A stretch of DNA of 64,000 nt, from positions 23,250,001-23,314,000 of the forward strand of contig OZ281495.1 in NCBI GenBank assembly GCA_965637545.1, given 5' to 3'. Made by a program: the position numbers and the translations under genes. Positions 36,971 through 56,277 of the stretch are shown here, piece after piece. How positions within the stretch are numbered: position 1 is the stretch's first letter; every line of letters begins with the position of its first letter. The notes beneath the pieces are model-generated. The model had not been told where the DNA came from. It worked only from the letters and a program-made list of their open reading frames with translations, and made no database searches. The stretch comes from Phallusia mammillata (lineage: Eukaryota).

Positions 36971-39468
36971 TCGATTGCATATGTCACAGCTTGCGGTGAA
37001 TCTGTATGTTTCAACAAAAATGTTGTATGACAATAGCGGTTGAATCAAAATTAGTAATCTTTATCAGTACCATCAATAAAATAATGGACTGGAAATTTTA
37101 AAACGGGTTAACATTTTTCCGTTCATTTTTTAATAATAAACTGCCATCTAGAGACAAGAGGAATTGCCCCTATTGTGTGCAAACAACCCGAAAAAATACA
37201 GATATCACAAGCGTCACAATATAAAATGTGACGTCATAAACACATAAGACTGATCGTCAGACTGGTGTGCAGCTCAATCTGTGCATCAAGTTTAAAAATA
37301 AGGCCGCATTAAATCGTATATATATATATGTATATATATTTATGAATGACATAAACCTATTTCTTTACATCAGTAATCTAAAACAAAAACAAGCAGGGTA
37401 TTGGCGGCCGTGCGTGAAATAAGGATCTGCGATGCGGCCGCCACAGCAAAACGTTGAGCACCCCTGGCCTAGATCTTCGTCTTAATGCAGTAAAATATTT
37501 AATTTAAAAACTTAACAAACTTGCGAGTCCGATTTTAGGCGTTGGTATTTCTAATAGTTGGCATTTGAAATTGAATCATTCCATTATTTAAAATCTCGCA
37601 TTTCATTCGAATGCATTTTGACAATTTAAAACCAACAATTCATAAGGAAATCTTTCAAACACGAATGATTAACTATTTGTTTTCAAAGAATGTATTGTTT
37701 ATTTTCTGTCATAGGATTAAATTTATTTTCCGTTCTGAAAAGGTAACATTATCTGTGTTGAAATGATCGTCTGAAATGTTCCTTTTCAAATCGTTTGGCC
37801 AAATTTTGAGAAACGATGCCACGATAAATACAACTTACAATTTATATCAATAGATCCCGAAATAACAGGCTTATGTAAGATTTTGCTAATTCAAAGCCAT
37901 GAATATATATATCGGTACGAAGAGACAAAGAAAATTGAATAACAGGTTTTGATTTCATGTTCTTGTTTGCAAATTAATTGCTTATTTAGCATAAATTCGT
38001 AACCTCACGCTGCACGTTATCTGCTTACATCAGCGGGAGCTCCTAAAGAAATTCTCGAACCAATTCCAACAGAAACTTAATCCCGCTGGTTACAATTGCA
38101 AAGCAAATCGGGGTTAAGTCCACTGGAAATTGGAGTAATCCTATTTGTGAAACAATGTCGCTTTACGTTACAGTGAGAATGTTTTGTTGATCAACTGAAA
38201 TACTGGCAACGTTATATAGCACGAAAACCGTTTTTTAGATTTTTAAAAAACAACCGCCTTTCAAAGATTTCGGATAATTGCACTATGCCCTTATAACCGG
38301 CAACATTCCCTACAGGAATTTCATCACTCTGTAATTTGCATTAATCGCATTACGACCTCGCAACATCAGCAAGTCCAAAATGTGGTGGCTTTAAATCTGG
38401 TTACACGATGTTTTTTCCTGGCTAAGGTAGTTTGAAACGATTTTATGTGAAAATTCCCCTTGAAAGATCACATTTGGGCTCGAGGCCTTTAACTTGGTTT
38501 GGGAAATCAATACATGGTGTACGTCACATTCCACAGTGAAATCGCAGGTGAGAACAAGAACTCTTGCATTGTGCAGGTTACAGACAAAAATGTTGTACAA
38601 TTTCGACAAAAAAACTTACCCAAAATATGCTCAATAAATTGTACAGCGGCCTTGATGCGTATCTAATGTTTGAACATATACCAACAATTATTTATGAAGA
38701 CGTCTCGAAACAAACAATGAAAATGCTGGAGAATGTAATAATTTTAGCTTATTTGTTTTACAGCAAGCTCATGGGTATTTTTGAAGGTTTTCTAACCTGA
38801 CAAATTTTGAGGCAATTCTAGTCGAATGCACGGAGATGCCGGATGGTTCAGATTTTGGCATTGTTTTTTAAGCCGTTTAGCTCTTGGCCTATCGTTCTGA
38901 ATGTTGTGTAGCTATTATGGAGCTTGTAGGATTAGACAGAAAGGAATTGGGCAGTAAACGCGGCACTTAACTTGTCGCTCAGACTTGACTGTGAACACGG
39001 CTTCTGAATAATTTACCTCATCGATTCGCTGTGGCTGTTGGTCGTTCGTTCCTTCCGCAACACGAAAAGACCAAGTCACGTGTCAGGTTTAGGCTTATAC
39101 GGGTATGTGTCACGTGAGTGAGTCCAACACCGTGTTTTGAATATCTAGCTGTTTTTGTTTTGCCAGTGACATGAAAAGATCTTTGCCGTTGAGCCTGTTT
39201 CAAAATAAATTGTGTATGATGCAAGATGAGAAAGCTGTTAATGGCTTTACATTTACAACAAAGTCAATCAAACAGATTATCCGTAATCAGTCAATTTATT
39301 ATCTATCAATCGGTTTTTCAATCAATCGATCAAATATTTCAGATTACGGGTTTCTCTACATCGGTATCCATCAAATTTCAGTCTTAAAATACTTTTATGC
39401 AATAATGATTTGGGCAAGTTACAACTGGACTAAAATGTACACAAAAGATACAACACATATAGTGGCAC

Positions 39469-39722
39469 CAGAATTGTAAAGAGGCCTGAAATTCGAGCCC
39501 GAACCCAAAAGCACAAGCCCGAAACCCGGCCCGATCTCGAATCGTTTTTGAGAAGCCCGTTTAAGCCCAAAAGTTTGATCGACAGGCCAGTACACTAAAC
39601 GCCTCATGCAGGAAAGACAAGAGAACAAACACAATAGACAATTGGTCTTGAACAAGGCGTTTTAGGGCCATTTGGCACTAGTTCAGGTTAAAAAACTGGT
39701 TACGGCCAGACTTACAACTCTG
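39469..39722. mobile_element. hAT MITE, cccgaa-repeat family (short copy)
   Basis: TIR cagaattgtaa / ttacaactctg; perfect 8-bp TSD AGTGGCAC; internal sequence shared with the copies at 50126 and 53795. Confidence 0.88.
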
Positions 39723-41908: not shown

Positions 41909-43860
41909 ATGAACGTAGCGTTTTTGCTGGCGATGTTTGCTACGTTAACTCAAGGTTAATTTTAATCTCTAAAACTTAAATAAAAAAACTTTTTTGTGTC
42001 TATATGTCTAAATTAGGTTACTTAAAAAAGCATTGGTAAAAGACAAACTTGATGACAAAAAAGTCTAAGTCATTTTAACAAAGTTCGTTTGTTTCTTTAG
42101 CATGTCACGAAAAAGTGCACTACCGGAAAAAACGATCTACCGAAAGCAAAGATCTGAGCATCATTGAAATAGAGAATTTTTTTCCAAGGTGCCTCCGCCC
42201 GAAACTGAAGACTATTGAGGACGTGTCGTTCGAAAGTGTTGTTAAATTTGCGGTTGAACACACAGCATGGTATGAATACGCAAACAACATCAAATGCAGG
42301 TGGGTCGAGAAAAAATGCTTTAAAGGCGCATTGCGAGAGAGTGTTATCATTCTTGTTGCCAATCTTTGTTGCCGTTGCTGTTTCCAAATTTGTGAAAAAC
42401 CGGTTTTAACAAACATTATGATTAGCGTAGCTCTAACACCAATTCGTGGCATAGACCAACAAAATAACATTATACTTGGCCAGTGGTGAAGCCAGTCAAA
42501 AGTTTTCGGAGAGGCCAAATAATTCATTATCCAATACTAATTGCTAACGATATGCGCACCGCGTTTTTTCGGTGCTGGACTACGCTTGATACCTAATTGT
42601 GTTTTCTATCGTTTCACCCACACTGGTTTTGTAACGGTATTTATACTAATACAGTATTTCACTAATGATAAAAAATAATTGATGAAACGCCCACAATAAA
42701 AAGCTTACTCTACACTTTTTTAAGTTTGTGTTCAGTGTTCCTATATTAAACTTGTTAATTTTAATTATCATTTACGAAACAGTACTAATTTTGTTTCGAA
42801 ATAGAAGAAAACCTATATTTTAAAATTTGTAAGTAATATTCGAGCTGTAAACAGTAGAAACAATAAACAGTAAACAGCAAAAATGTTTCACATCCTGTTT
42901 CCGTCCGTGATTCAAATAATCACGCGATCACTGGATTTTGCAATCTCAATAAACCCAATTAGATATCTGGAATAATTTTGACACTCGAAACACAAATTTG
43001 TGTAATTTTTTTTATAAACTTATATAAGTTTATATGCTGGTTTTCAAGAAATCTTCTGTGCTTTGGGGACTTTTTCATGTCGAATTACAAGGCCCAACTT
43101 ACAACTCTGGTCGTGATTCCTTTTGGGGTTGTTGCGTCGAAATCCTATATACTTTGGCAAATTTATATCATTTTTTCAGAAAATCCGAAAATCGAGACAC
43201 AGTTGAATGTTGGGAAGGAGCTGTTGCAGATTTGCTTACGGACGATTCGCGAGTTTTCTTCGCAGTGATAGCATGTCTGAACCAATTCGATATCTTCGTC
43301 CAAACTGGCGATGGTTCGTACACGCTTTAGATGCTATTTAGAAGTAATGATTAACCCCGACATGTTGCACAGATTTTTCTAATGGCGAGTTTGCAGAAAC
43401 TCCTGAAGGAAAAAAACCTGTTAAAAACCAAAATTCTTGTCCGCCCCGCACCAAGACAAATTTTGATAAGTGTGTAGACGACGGATTAAAGAAGCGAGTC
43501 GAAACTAACCCTATCGATGACATGCCTTCGGTCGCTAAAGTGATAGAAAAATATTTCAAATGCAGGTACTTTAGAACTATAAACAGTTAAAATTGCACTG
43601 AGTGACATCGTTTATTTCTTGTCTTTACCTATTGCAGCCAATGCGATTGTAACAGTGTGTTAGAAGTGAACAACGAGTTTGCAAAAAGCTTCTTCAAAAA
43701 AGGTCTAACATGTGACAGCTGCTGGTCAACACGCATTGCTGGTCTGGTCAAACAAGATTCACGCTTGTTGAAACCTATTCGCGCATGTGCCACTGATTTG
43801 GAAGACGTGGACGTTGCACCTGCGACATTAGGTGACACTAGAGACGTTAATGTGGGTTAG
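41909..43860 (+). CDS. Putative secreted preproprotein, 264 aa, 5 exons, furin site and duplicated Cys-containing helical repeat
   Basis: Exons 41909-41954, 42101-42299, 43180-43313, 43373-43565, 43638-43860 join in phase (1,2,1,2) with no stops. Signal peptide MNVAFLLAMFATLTQA, then CHEKVHY-RKKR. Internal repeat ECWEGAVADLLTDDSRVFFAVIAC vs SCWSTRIAGLVKQDSRLLKPIRAC. Confidence 0.8.
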
Positions 43861-53071: not shown

Positions 53072-56000
53072 ATGTATGACGTCATAGTTGTGGGCGCAGG
53101 AATTATTGGCTCGTGGACTGCATACCACTTGGCCTTACAAAAGTATAACGTTTTGCTGTTAGACCAGGTTGGTAAGGTTTTGTGAATATCAATGAAAGAC
53201 CATAACCTGTTTCCAATTTGTTTTTTAACAGTTTTCATTGCCACATTCCAGGGGCAGCTCGCAGGGGCATGCCCGTTTGACAAAGCGGTCTCACCGCAAG
53301 CACTATTGCTCTGAATTGATTCCGGAAGCCATGCGGCATTGGGCATCGTTGGAGCGAGTATCCGGGACAGAGTTAGTACTGTAAGTGCAATGCAGCAATG
53401 CGGCAATGTAGCTGAAAAATTGCAGGTCCCAGTGCCATTTTGCTCTCTTGTTGTGAATCTGTTTTTTTGCGAATAATTTTAAAAGGGCAAAAAATACAAG
53501 CCTTTGTCTGTGCATGAAGCATCAATGACAGCAGCTATTGTCGAAATGCTGTTAATCTTTGGAACACTATATACGGATCTGTTCATAAGTTACATAATGA
53601 AAATAACGGCCCAAAATAGAAGTAGAAGGCGACATACTTTATTGTTCAAGCGTTTCGGCAAATGTTGATGCCATCAGCTGTAATTGATGCACATAATTTG
53701 GTATTTTTGCTGAGATTTGTTCGAACCATGTATTAGTTGTGTACCCAAATGTTCTTCACCAAAACCACTTTTCACTAAGATGGTGCATTTAGGCCAGAGT
53801 TGCAAGCGGGCCCGAAATCTGAGCCCGAAGCCGGCCCGAACCCGAAAGTAAGCCCGAAGCCCGGCCCGAACCCGAAACGTTTTTGCAAAGCCCGTTTAGG
53901 CCCGAAATTTTGATTGACAGCCCAATCCACAAAAGCCGTGCAACAAAGGATGAGAAAGAAAAAAGAGAAAGACAACAAACACGATGAGCAATAGTAGACA
54001 ATGGGGTAAACAATACGTTTTAGAGGAGGGTGGGCATCAGGTCAAAGCCAGAGAATTGTTACTTAGCTGAGTGATTTTATTTAAAAAACAATGGCGGACA
54101 CGGAACGTAAAGTCAGGCCCGTTTTAAGCCCGTTTTCTCACAAATACCCAAGCCCGAAGCCGAACCCGGCCCGAAAAGCCCGGTCCGACTTGCAACTCTG
54201 ATTTAGGCACACCGGACATTTGACCATTGCGGAAAAAGAAAGCACGGGAGAGCTTATCAGTCGCATGAAGCATTACATGGACCAAAATGGCGTGCGATAT
54301 ACTTCATACGCTGGGCATGAAATCGGCGCAAACTTTTTAGGCATGGACTTTGACGACAATTTTTCGGCATATTTCGAGGACAACGGTGCCGTACTGAAGG
54401 CCGATAAATGCCTGCAAACTATTTGGGTGAGAAAATAACAAGCTAAGGAATAAAACAAAACATCACTGAATAAACCAATATCTCTCTGTACCAGAAAGAG
54501 TTTCTTGATTTGGGTGGAACCATACTTGACGAGGAAAAAGTATTGGCCATTAAACCTATAAATGAAAACAACGTAACTGCAGAAACTAATAAAGGTGTAT
54601 ACAGCTCAAAATCTGTAGTCTTGGCTTGTGGACCATGGATTGCCGAAGTAATGCGGGACTTGGACGTGCAGGTGCCCGCCCAGGTAACTAAAGTTTGTTT
54701 CCCAACTTCTCACAACCAAGTGTTCAATTGCAAACTTTGTGCTATACTTTGTTTAGGCTGCAACGGTTAAAGTTCACTATTGGAAAATTCGGGATTCTTA
54801 TTCTCGTCGAGCAAAGTACGATTTTCCGTTTATGGTGTACATGTCCGGTTATCACGTGTATTCCACACCCGACTACGAATATCCCGGAATGGTAAAGGTA
54901 AACCAAATGTTCGGATGGACAAATCTTACAGCCTTTGTGTCAATTATGGAAGCAAAAATAGAACGCTTAACACACCATCACTCGCCTAACTCTGTGTTCC
55001 CTAACCTTTATCGACGAATTCCTTCCTTAACAATTCAAAGCATTTTCATTCCTCCCCAATACACTACATAGTGGAAGCTAAACACACAAATATCATTAAA
55101 ATTGAGTATTATGAATTTTACTGGTTATTTTTCCAAGGGCTTAAGTGATGTTTTACAAATCATAAGTACAAGTCAAAGTAAATTCATCCCTTATTAGGTG
55201 GAAGGTTGGGGACCACTGGCCTGACTTGTGTTGTTACTAAGATCTGCTTAACCGTTCTAACTTCGTCAGCGTTGATATACAACGATCAAATGTAACCAAC
55301 CGACCTTTTCACGAACAGGTGTGTTATCATCATCGTGTTTCCGCCGATCCGGACGCAAGAGACAGGAGGCCTTCTGATAAGCACAACGAACTAGCTGCTA
55401 AACGTTTCGCTGTCTTGAAAAACTTAGTGGCAAAACATCTCAGCTATTTGGAACCAGAACCGACGATCACTGAAACGTTTTTGCAAACGGTTGGTTTTGG
55501 TTTGGCAAGCTATAACCGTTTGTTATTAGGAAATAAACTTAGGAATATTTTTGTATCAGAACGGTGTTTATTACCTGTTTGTTACCGGACACAATGTACT
55601 AATTTGTATGTGTAAACAAAATTAGTTCCAGTGTCTTATTTGTTTTGTTGTATAATTGTACAGTAAATTGTTAATCAATTAACTGTTTTTTTGTAGTGGC
55701 ATTGTGTGATAAATCATTTCAAAGACGCAATTTTATGTGCTATTACCGTTAGCGTTCGAAGGGCAAATTCGACAGACTTTTTAACATGCAAATATCATTT
55801 CAAAGTTGAACAAGTTTAACAATGATTTTTATGCAAACCTTTATTGATACGTTAAGTGCCTATATTTGTTGTAGATGACTCCAGATAGCGACTTTATTTT
55901 AGATTACCACCCGCTGCACAAAAACATCATTTTGGGAGCAGGATTTTCAGGTAGGCTACGAGTACGACATAGTGTGCATATGTTAAATAACTTCAACAAC

Positions 56001-56277
56001 TCCTGACTTTGACATTGACATTTTAACATAAAAAGTAAGGTGATTAACTCAGTACTGAAAGGGTTGCCAACCTCTTGGGTAAAGTACGTACGCGCTGTCG
56101 TTTTGGACGCTTACAAAATCCAAAAAATAACCATTGATGTATATTCCTATAGGTCACGGATTCGGCCCCGCACCTACAATCGGAAAAATTTTGGCAAATC
56201 TTGCAACTTCTCAGCAACAAGATTATGATCTACGGCCGTTTAGCTTGAACCGGAAGTACAAACAACCCCGGCTTTAG
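53072..56277 (+). CDS. PIPOX: Peroxisomal sarcosine/pipecolate oxidase-like flavoprotein (divergent), ~388 aa, 8 exons
   Basis: Exons 53072-53167, 53232-53380, 54207-54426, 54495-54683, 54757-54897, 55319-55489, 55875-55950, 56153-56277, all in phase. Rossmann motif [12 protein letters not shown]; LPHSRGSS; VVLACGPW; [11 protein letters not shown]; [12 protein letters not shown]; GAGFSGHGF; C-terminal PRL (PTS1-like). Confidence 0.9.
53795..54200. mobile_element. hAT MITE, cccgaa-repeat family, inserted on the PIPOX intron-2 splice acceptor
   Basis: TIR CAGAGTTGCAAG at both ends; perfect 8-bp TSD ATTTAG|GC (53787-53794, 54201-54208) that contains the 3' splice site. Confidence 0.93.
54992..55218. 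mobile_element. Older hAT MITE in PIPOX intron 5
   Basis: Imperfect TIR ctgtgttccctaacc / ggttggggaccactg; TSD GCCTAACT vs GCCTGACT (7/8). Confidence 0.65.

What the first reader, a model, noticed from the sequence alone, without database searches (positions are those of the whole stretch)
53381..54208. MITE inserted exactly on a 3' splice site, duplicating the acceptor
Seen: the 8-bp TSD is ATTTAG|GC, i.e. the PIPOX intron-2/exon-3 junction itself. The left copy (AG 53791-53792) keeps the native branch-like CACTAAG and pyrimidine tract; the right copy (AG 54205-54206) has only the TIR upstream (cttgcaactctg). Using the left AG adds 414 nt with an in-frame TGA at 53911-53913. Using the right AG restores the normal protein. 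A GTAAGC donor inside the element (~53848) could also make a 55-nt frameshifting exon. Inference: either a hypomorphic allele or a TE whose end acts as a functional acceptor, so that the element is spliced out in an introner-like way and creates an NMD-coupled switch.
Basis: partly seen in the sequence, partly recalled or inferred. Interest (0 to 1): 0.7.

Follow-up and report, generated by a model that had tools for sequence, protein, structure and literature searches.

The report
Jumping element duplicating a splice acceptor
A small jumping element of a common sea-squirt family landed exactly on an intron-exon boundary of a PIPOX-like enzyme gene and duplicated the splice signal. The gene still reads correctly on paper, but the landing spot fits the element's normal target taste, and which signal the cell uses could not be tested.

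Summary
A 406-bp MITE (53795-54200) has 20-nt terminal inverted repeats and a perfect 8-bp target-site duplication, ATTTAGGC. That duplication is the intron-2/exon-3 junction of an 8-exon PIPOX-like gene.

- **Right AG (54205-54206):** gives a 388-aa reading frame collinear with 390-395-aa homologues, with no gap at the junction.
- **Left AG (53791-53792):** meets a TGA at 53911-53913.
- **Internal GTAAGC (53848):** could define a 55-nt frameshifting exon.

The element belongs to an abundant hAT-type family: 390 genome matches to its terminal 23-mer, and 100 of 106 two-ended copies carry 8-bp duplications. The family's target logo is R-T-T-Y-R-R-A-Y, and ATTTAGGC scores at the 95th percentile of that preference. 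AG is not enriched in the duplications. Of about 100 sampled copies, only this one was seen to lie on an acceptor of a homology-supported exon. The location therefore needs no special explanation.

The intron is old, so the element is not an introner.

The scan has already noted the same configuration at several other places in this genome, none with RNA proof.

My verdict is an ordinary, probably tolerated insertion. The evolved NMD switch is unsupported.

The parts
53232..53380 (+). Exon 2 of the PIPOX-like gene; ends in phase 2 (...GTA CT|)
   Evidence: tblastn of P0003, P0009 and P0014; translation
53381..53786 (+). Native part of intron 2 up to the left TSD copy, starting with donor GTAAGT at 53381 (the native intron ran to the left AG at 53792, 412 nt in all)
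   Evidence: Sequence. Intron position and phase are conserved in a metagenomic homologue contig, L148
53773..53779 (+). CACTAAG, a branch-point-like motif 14 nt upstream of the left AG
   Evidence: Sequence only; its function is inferred
53787..53794 (+). Left TSD copy ATTTAGGC; holds the original acceptor AG (53791-53792) with its native upstream signals
53795..54200 (+). 406-bp hAT-type MITE. TIRs lie at 53795-53814 and 54181-54200. Subterminal GCCCGAA-type repeats occur at both ends
53848..53853 (+). Donor-like GTAAGC inside the element. It arises from a 2-bp deletion relative to the family consensus, shared by 6 of 87 copies. Paired with the left AG it would define a 55-nt frameshifting exon
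53911..53913 (+). In-frame TGA met if the left AG is used (121-aa product)
54201..54208 (+). Right TSD copy ATTTAGGC; holds the exon-proximal acceptor AG (54205-54206), preceded by the right TIR
54207..54426 (+). Exon 3 (220 nt), followed by donor GTGAGA at 54427
   Evidence: tblastn collinearity; weak match in register to monomeric sarcosine oxidase 1zov residues 105-155

Best explanation
**Shown.** A non-autonomous hAT-type transposon (MITE) of an abundant, recently active family inserted into the 8 bp that straddle the intron-2/exon-3 boundary of a PIPOX-like FAD-oxidase gene. hAT integration duplicates 8 bp, so the acceptor core TTTAG|GC now exists twice, 414 bp apart. The site is an ordinary good target for this family, so the position reflects target preference plus chance, not a splice-site-seeking mechanism. 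The intron predates the element.

**Inferred.** The insertion is a tolerated, near-neutral or mildly deleterious allele. The enlarged 826-nt intron is removed mainly with the exon-proximal AG at 54205-54206. That AG keeps the last six intron bases, and its pyrimidine content is no worse than that of the gene's other acceptors. This gives the normal 388-aa protein. Some transcripts probably use the left AG, or the 55-nt exon ending at GTAAGC, and carry a premature stop that should send them to nonsense-mediated decay. That leakage would be a by-product, not an evolved switch.
For: - **Structure and family:**. There are 390 matches to the terminal 23-mer against 0 in the reversed control. 100 of 106 two-ended copies have 8-bp TSDs.
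- **Target preference:** the logo is R-T-T-Y-R-R-A-Y. ATTTAGGC scores 2.25 bits against a family median of 2.45, the 95th percentile of window 8-mers.
- **Gene model:** eight exons are collinear with P0003, P0009 and P0014, with no gap at ELVL-H-TGHL. The model is 1167 nt with a single terminal stop and all introns are GT-AG.
- **Acceptor quality:** pyrimidine fraction at -25 to -4 is 0.59 for both AG copies, against 0.55-0.73 for the other six acceptors of the gene.
- **Age:** the copy has 7 private substitutions in 406 bp and ranks 78th of 87 by that count. It is among the older copies of the family, so it is not a fresh lesion.
- **Ancient intron:** a distant homologue contig has the intron at the same position and phase, with acceptor CTTTAG| and no element.
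- **Possible help from structure:** the TIRs can pair, with a duplex energy of -44.8 kcal/mol, and they pair in both the MFE and the centroid fold. This could bring the native branch region close to the distal AG.
Against:
- The left AG keeps all its native upstream signals and is the first AG after them. Standard 3' splice-site choice (first AG downstream of the branch point; established knowledge) therefore predicts substantial use of the left AG.
- No good yUnAy branch motif lies 15-40 nt upstream of the right AG. The only CTGAT is 5 nt from it.
- The intact reading frame does not prove selection since the insertion. Under neutrality, P(no disabling substitution) is about 0.23.
- The whole-region fold is no more stable than shuffled sequence (z = 0.11).
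- Whether the insertion is fixed or polymorphic is unknown.
Confidence: 0.55

Rival explanations
1. Hypomorphic or null allele. The spliceosome still uses the original left AG with its native branch point and pyrimidine tract, or pairs it with the internal GTAAGC to include a 55-nt exon. Most mRNA then carries a premature stop and is degraded. The allele persists because the gene is a dispensable divergent paralogue, or because the insertion is polymorphic and recessive.
For: - The left AG keeps every upstream signal and the +1/+2 exon bases.
- The AAA|GTAAGC donor is as good as the gene's own donors.
- Three more PIPOX-like exon-5 matches cluster at C2:8.19-8.21 Mb, so some redundancy is possible.
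- An earlier scan note reports another MITE insertion in this genome that behaves as a presence/absence knockout allele (s1-394857; unchecked by me).
Against: - The gene shows no other lesion. All eight exons are open and all splice sites are canonical.
- The copy is among the older family members.
- The right acceptor's pyrimidine content matches that of the other acceptors.
- A 634-nt internal exon would be far larger than the gene's 76-220-nt internal exons.
Confidence: 0.3
2. Evolved use. The TIR end plus the TSD is a selected functional acceptor. The element is removed in an introner-like way, and the choice between the two AGs is a regulated switch coupled to nonsense-mediated decay.
For: - Only the geometry supports this: two identical acceptor cores, a premature stop after the first, and possible TIR pairing.
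- TSD-derived splice sites are documented for introners (PMC9860276, PMC11282704). Introners are also reported in the ascidian Styela clava (PMC12130899).
Against: - The intron pre-exists and its position is conserved. The element supplies no 5' splice site for it.
- The family's TSDs show no AG enrichment, and the site fits the ordinary target logo.
- Among about 100 sampled copies, only this one was seen to sit on an acceptor of a homology-supported exon. The other AG-bearing TSDs were not all checked.
- There is no evidence of regulation.
Confidence: 0.04
3. Assembly artefact: a repeat copy misplaced by the assembler.
For: None specific. The family is abundant, so repeats could confuse an assembler in principle.
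Against: - The 8-bp TSD is perfect and lies exactly at the family's element ends, as in 100 other copies.
- The copy has 7 private substitutions, so it is not a collapsed consensus.
- Assemblers do not create target-site duplications.
Confidence: 0.02

Closest known systems
hAT-superfamily MITEs (non-autonomous Ac/Ds-like elements)
   Same: - 8-bp TSD.
- TIRs beginning CAGAG (the YARNG type).
- Palindromic target logo with T at position 2 and A at position 7.
- Small, non-coding and high in copy number.
- The genome holds many hAT transposase genes: 150 matches to PF05699, including six loci with identical scores and 660-aa open frames.
   Different: No autonomous partner with these TIRs was found among the 20 transposase loci checked. 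As far as my literature searches show, the family itself is undescribed.
Introners, i.e. intron-generating transposons that co-opt a splice site from their TSD (Micromonas, Aureococcus, Symbiodinium and others; also reported in the ascidian Styela clava). Sources: PMC9860276, PMC11282704, PMC12130899
   Same: A TIR/TSD DNA element whose TSD supplies the AG that could end the intron, so that removal restores the mRNA exactly.
   Different: - Here the element landed in an existing, conserved intron and does not create one.
- It brings no 5' splice site for that intron.
- The family shows no sign of being specialised for genes or splice sites.
- Splicing is unproven.
Splicing of maize Ds/Ac (hAT) insertions out of host transcripts
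   Same: A hAT-family element inside a gene whose damage depends on which cryptic donor and acceptor sites in or beside the element are used. This gives leaky alleles.
   Different: Those cases are exon insertions removed imperfectly through sites within the element ends. Here an exact native acceptor copy from the TSD is available.
MITE-derived non-canonical introns of the tunicate Fritillaria borealis (Henriet et al. 2019, as summarised in PMC11282704)
   Same: A tunicate, with MITEs carrying TIRs and TSDs at intron-exon boundaries, where the spliceosome neutralises the insertions.
   Different: Those introns are whole MITEs with non-GT/AG ends, and they depend on an altered spliceosome. Here all sites are canonical GT-AG and the element is only part of the intron.

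Membership tests
hAT-superfamily non-autonomous element (MITE) | 8-bp target-site duplication | tested here: met
   ATTTAGGC is duplicated 8/8. 100 of 106 two-ended family copies have 8-bp TSDs with at most 1 mismatch.
hAT-superfamily non-autonomous element (MITE) | Short TIRs beginning YARNG | tested here: met
   The ends CAGAGTTGCAAG...CTTGCAACTCTG are conserved in all aligned copies. That this motif defines the family is from my own knowledge.
hAT-superfamily non-autonomous element (MITE) | Weak palindromic target consensus nTnnnnAn | tested here: met
   Position 2 is T in 45% and position 7 is A in 52% of copies. The centre is Y-R (85% and 79%).
hAT-superfamily non-autonomous element (MITE) | Small, non-coding, many copies | tested here: met
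   The element is 406 bp. The terminal 23-mer has 390 genome matches against 0 in the control, and the first look gave 1552 candidates.
hAT-superfamily non-autonomous element (MITE) | Autonomous partner with the same TIRs that encodes a hAT transposase | tested here: inconclusive
   There are 150 PF05699 matches in the genome. None of the 20 fetched loci, each with 1.5-kb flanks, carries the TIR.
Introner (intron-generating transposon) | The element makes up the intron, at a lineage-specific intron position | tested here: not met
   412 nt of non-element intron (53381-53792) lie upstream of the element. The same intron position and phase occur in the distant homologue contig L148.
Introner (intron-generating transposon) | Splice sites carried by the element and/or co-opted from the TSD | tested here: inconclusive
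   The 3' AG of the exon-proximal site is TSD-derived. The 5' site is the gene's own. Use of the site is unproven.
Introner (intron-generating transposon) | Removal by splicing shown in RNA | not testable with these tools
Regulated unproductive splicing (alternative splicing coupled to NMD) | A PTC isoform is observed, regulated, and conserved | not testable with these tools
   No RNA data were available. The alternative site comes from a lineage-specific transposon copy.
PIPOX / monomeric sarcosine oxidase family (host gene) | DAO-type FAD-binding domain and overall collinearity | tested here: met
   Exons 1 and 4 hit PF01266. Exon 3 matches 1zov residues 105-155. Eight exons are collinear with 390-395-aa homologues.
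PIPOX / monomeric sarcosine oxidase family (host gene) | Cysteine for covalent FAD attachment (the ...SCM.T... motif) | tested here: not met
   The window reads ETFLQT. Homologues P0003, P0009 and P0014 also lack the Cys, while P0013 has EPCMLT. The gene is therefore PIPOX-like, not a canonical PIPOX.

The most novel reading that the evidence does not exclude
In this ascidian, hAT MITEs whose target preference (TTYRRA) resembles the end of an intron may repeatedly land on acceptors and be neutralised by their own TSD. The TIR stem would loop the element out of the pre-mRNA, so that the native branch point works with the distal AG copy. If so, the scan's several acceptor-duplicating insertions would be a natural series showing how DNA transposons become spliceable. 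That would be a first step towards introner behaviour in a chordate, with the leaky proximal AG supplying raw material for NMD-coupled regulation.
Probability: 0.1. Interest if true: 0.6.

Novelty: new member of a known kind. Interest (0 to 1): 0.3.

Why it matters
As it stands, this is one more transposon insertion in a gene, at a spot that its family's target preference and plain chance explain.

Its value is as a clean natural experiment. Two acceptor cores identical from -6 to +2 lie 414 nt apart. One has the native branch region and the other has only a transposon end. A premature stop reports which one is used.

The scan has noted several more cases of the same configuration in this genome. 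With RNA-seq, the set could show how ascidian spliceosomes choose 3' splice sites, and whether TSD-regenerated acceptors let DNA transposons survive in genes. That question bears on how introners arise.

Tried and rejected
- **Transcript-derived proteins spanning the junction.**
  - The word search with exon 3 found nothing.
  - The exhaustive search with exon 3 found only homologues of at most 44% identity.
  - A note under says records of the window's own genome may be left out of these collections, so this absence means nothing.
- **An empty-site haplotig in the assembly.** Exon 3 is single-copy.
- **Selection since the insertion.** Under neutrality, P(no disabling substitution) is about 0.23, which is uninformative. 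The copy has no private indels.
- **Other family copies on acceptors.**
  - 16 of 100 TSDs have AG at positions 5-6 on one strand or the other.
  - The most acceptor-like of these, GTTTAGGC at C2:11.30 Mb, faces away from what looks by eye like a coding stretch on the opposite strand. That stretch was not confirmed by ORF or homology search.
  - A second candidate shows no coding exon downstream.
- **Autonomous partner.** None was found in the 20 hAT transposase loci checked.
- **Special RNA structure.** The TIRs pair, but the region folds no better than shuffled sequence.
- **Joined model.** Exons were searched separately by reference. The joined CDS was only counted for length, frame and stops inside a script.

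Full report
**Observation**

The sequence is exactly as described.
- ATTTAGGC occurs at 53787-53794 and again at 54201-54208.
- Between the two copies lies a 406-bp element, 53795-54200.
- Its 20-nt ends, CAGAGTTGCAAGCGGGCCCG and CGGTCCGACTTGCAACTCTG, are inverted repeats.

Exon 2 of a plus-strand gene ends at 53380 in phase 2.
- Joining it to 54207 reads ...[21 protein letters not shown]...
- Joining it to 53793 reads ...[12 protein letters not shown]... and stops at TGA 53911-53913 after 121 residues.
- The internal GTAAGC at 53848 would close a 55-nt exon (53793-53847) that shifts the frame.

**The element**

A search of the window's own genome found 40 scored full-length copies at 89-96% identity, out of 1552 first-look candidates. 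The left terminal 23-mer has 390 matches with at most one mismatch, against none for the reversed control.

I fetched 90 further copies to add to the 30 loci.
- Of 106 copies with both ends in reach, 100 carry an 8-bp duplication with at most one mismatch, directly outside CAGAG...CTCTG.
- The 8-bp TSDs, the YARNG-type ends and a palindromic target logo place the family with hAT-type MITEs.
- The logo over positions 1-8 is R, T (45%), T (50%), Y (85%), R (79%), R (76%), A (52%), Y.

The genome is rich in hAT transposase genes. There are 150 matches to PF05699, including six loci with identical scores and 660-aa open frames. I found no autonomous partner with these TIRs among 20 loci checked.

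This copy has 7 private substitutions among 87 aligned copies and ranks 78th by that count. Forty-one copies have none. The family has therefore been active recently, and this insertion is one of its older ones. The internal GTAAGC comes from a 2-bp deletion relative to the consensus (GTATAAGC), shared with six copies.

**The gene**

- Exons 1 and 4 hit Pfam DAO.
- Exon 3 aligns in register with monomeric sarcosine oxidase residues 105-155.
- The exhaustive protein search with exon 3 returned full-length homologues of 390-395 aa.
- Aligned back to the window, these homologues define eight collinear exons: 53072-53167, 53232-53380, 54207-54426, 54495-54683, 54757-54897, 55319-55489, 55875-55950 and 56153-56277.
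- At the junction in question, P0003 residue 84 aligns to the end of exon 2 and residue 86 to the T of TGHL. Exactly one residue spans the splice, so the right AG restores the protein without gain or loss.
- All seven introns are GT-AG. The model is 1167 nt with one terminal stop.

The protein and its closest homologues lack the cysteine that binds FAD covalently in canonical PIPOX/MSOX (ETFLQT here; P0013 has EPCMLT). It is therefore a PIPOX-like paralogue. Three weaker exon-5 matches cluster at C2:8.19-8.21 Mb.

**Is the position special?**

ATTTAGGC scores 2.25 bits on a matrix built from the other 99 TSDs. The family median is 2.45, and 2.25 is the 95th percentile of all 8-mers in the window. 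It is a typical good target.

The other acceptors of this gene, taken in the same register, fall between the 50th and 98th percentile. Intron ends of the form T-T-Y-A-G|G-N therefore tend to be above-average targets.

AG itself is not favoured.
- It occupies TSD positions 5-6 in 8 of 100 copies.
- About 14 would be expected from the logo's independent frequencies, and about 6 from base composition.
- Of the 16 copies with AG in that register on either strand, I looked closely at the two most acceptor-like.
- One faces away from what looks by eye like a coding stretch on the opposite strand. The other shows no coding exon downstream.
- So within the sample, only the present copy was seen to sit on an acceptor of a homology-supported exon.

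A rough expectation supports chance. I assume on the order of 10^5 introns, which is my assumption and not measured.
- Seven registers per acceptor would contain the AG in the 240-Mb genome.
- About 0.3% of random insertions would then duplicate an acceptor AG.
- That is one to a few for a family of 400-1500 copies, and more across all hAT families.

The scan has noted several other cases in this genome: s1-353692, s1-353711, s1-380908, s1-405557, and the related s1-361554. That number is what chance plus target preference would give.

**Not an introner**

Intron 2 has 412 nt of its own (53381-53792), ending in the left acceptor. A marine-metagenome contig encoding a 44%-identical homologue (L148) has an intron at the same codon and phase. 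It ends CTTTAG| and has no element. The intron is old and the element is a later arrival in it.

**Which AG is used?**

The protein collections may leave out records of this genome (note under), so they cannot speak to it either. What follows is inference.

For the right AG:
- It shares the last six intron bases and the first two exon bases with the original site.
- Its upstream 22 nt are 59% pyrimidine, equal to the left copy and within the range of the gene's other acceptors, 0.55-0.73.
- It gives a 220-nt exon like its neighbours, rather than a 634-nt one.
- The TIRs pair in both the MFE and the centroid fold, with a duplex energy of -44.8 kcal/mol. This could bring the native branch region near the distal AG.
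- The gene has no other lesion, although the copy is not young.

For the left AG:
- It keeps every native upstream signal and is the first AG after them.
- The right AG has no good branch motif at a usual distance.
- AAA|GTAAGC is a good donor.

Two checks carry no weight either way. The intact frame has a probability of about 0.23 under neutrality since insertion. The region as a whole folds no better than shuffled sequence (z = 0.11).

My best reading, at about 55%, is a tolerated insertion that is spliced mostly at the right AG, with some PTC-bearing leakage. A hypomorphic or null allele gets about 30%. An evolved switch, an assembly artefact and other readings get a few per cent each.

**Comparison with what is known**

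TSD-derived splice sites are a documented feature of introners (PMC9860276, PMC11282704). Introners are now also reported in the ascidian Styela clava (PMC12130899). MITE-derived introns abound in the tunicate Fritillaria (summarised in PMC11282704). From my own knowledge, hAT elements such as maize Ds are known to be spliced out of transcripts with variable fidelity.

The present case shares the TSD trick with these. It differs in that the element sits in a pre-existing intron and supplies no donor, and its removal is unproven. It is a new member of a known kind.

**Verdict**

The functional part is untested and its more novel half is unsupported. Interest is low to moderate, mainly as a ready-made test of 3' splice-site choice once RNA data are laid on it.

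Noticed in passing
window 55472-55489 (end of exon 6): The PIPOX-like protein reads ETFLQT where canonical PIPOX/MSOX has the FAD-linking cysteine. The closest full-length homologues P0003, P0009 and P0014 also lack it, while P0013 has EPCMLT. The loss is therefore a conserved trait of a paralogue family, not decay of this copy. This bears on scan note s1-408764.
   Followed up: partly
G000:C2:8196827-8210260 (L033-L035): Three weaker matches (34-39% identity) to exon 5 of the PIPOX-like gene cluster within 14 kb. They may be a tandem group of paralogues, perhaps including the canonical PIPOX.
   Followed up: no
window 39461-39722 and 43098-43109: A related, shorter MITE of about 254 bp ends in CTTACAACTCTG and is flanked by the 8-bp TSD AGTGGCAC. 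A second such right end lies at 43109, without an obvious left end. It sits inside the stretch of another scan finding (41909-43860).
   Followed up: partly
L128-L133 (for example G000:C1:81912-82112): Six loci on six different contigs give identical scores to the hAT dimerisation domain, each within a 660-aa open frame. This looks like a very recently active autonomous hAT transposon. Its ends were not compared with the MITE beyond a TIR scan.
   Followed up: partly
L013, L016, L022 (for example G000:C5:16766322-16766563): In some family copies the subterminal CCCGAA/CCCGG repeats near the right end are expanded into tandem arrays with a 33-bp period. These stretch the element to 490-763 bp.
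   Followed up: no
L126 (G000:C2:11304216-11304614, minus strand): Another copy of the same family has the near-identical TSD GTTTAGGC, preceded by TTCTAAC and a T-rich stretch, so it looks like an acceptor. The only stretch nearby that looks coding (judged by eye, not confirmed) is on the opposite strand, so the resemblance is probably chance.
   Followed up: partly
L148, L149, L150: Homologues of this ascidian-type PIPOX-like protein turn up in marine metagenome and metatranscriptome assemblies (ENA ERZ907791, JGI 3300018840). They presumably come from planktonic tunicates or larvae.
   Followed up: no
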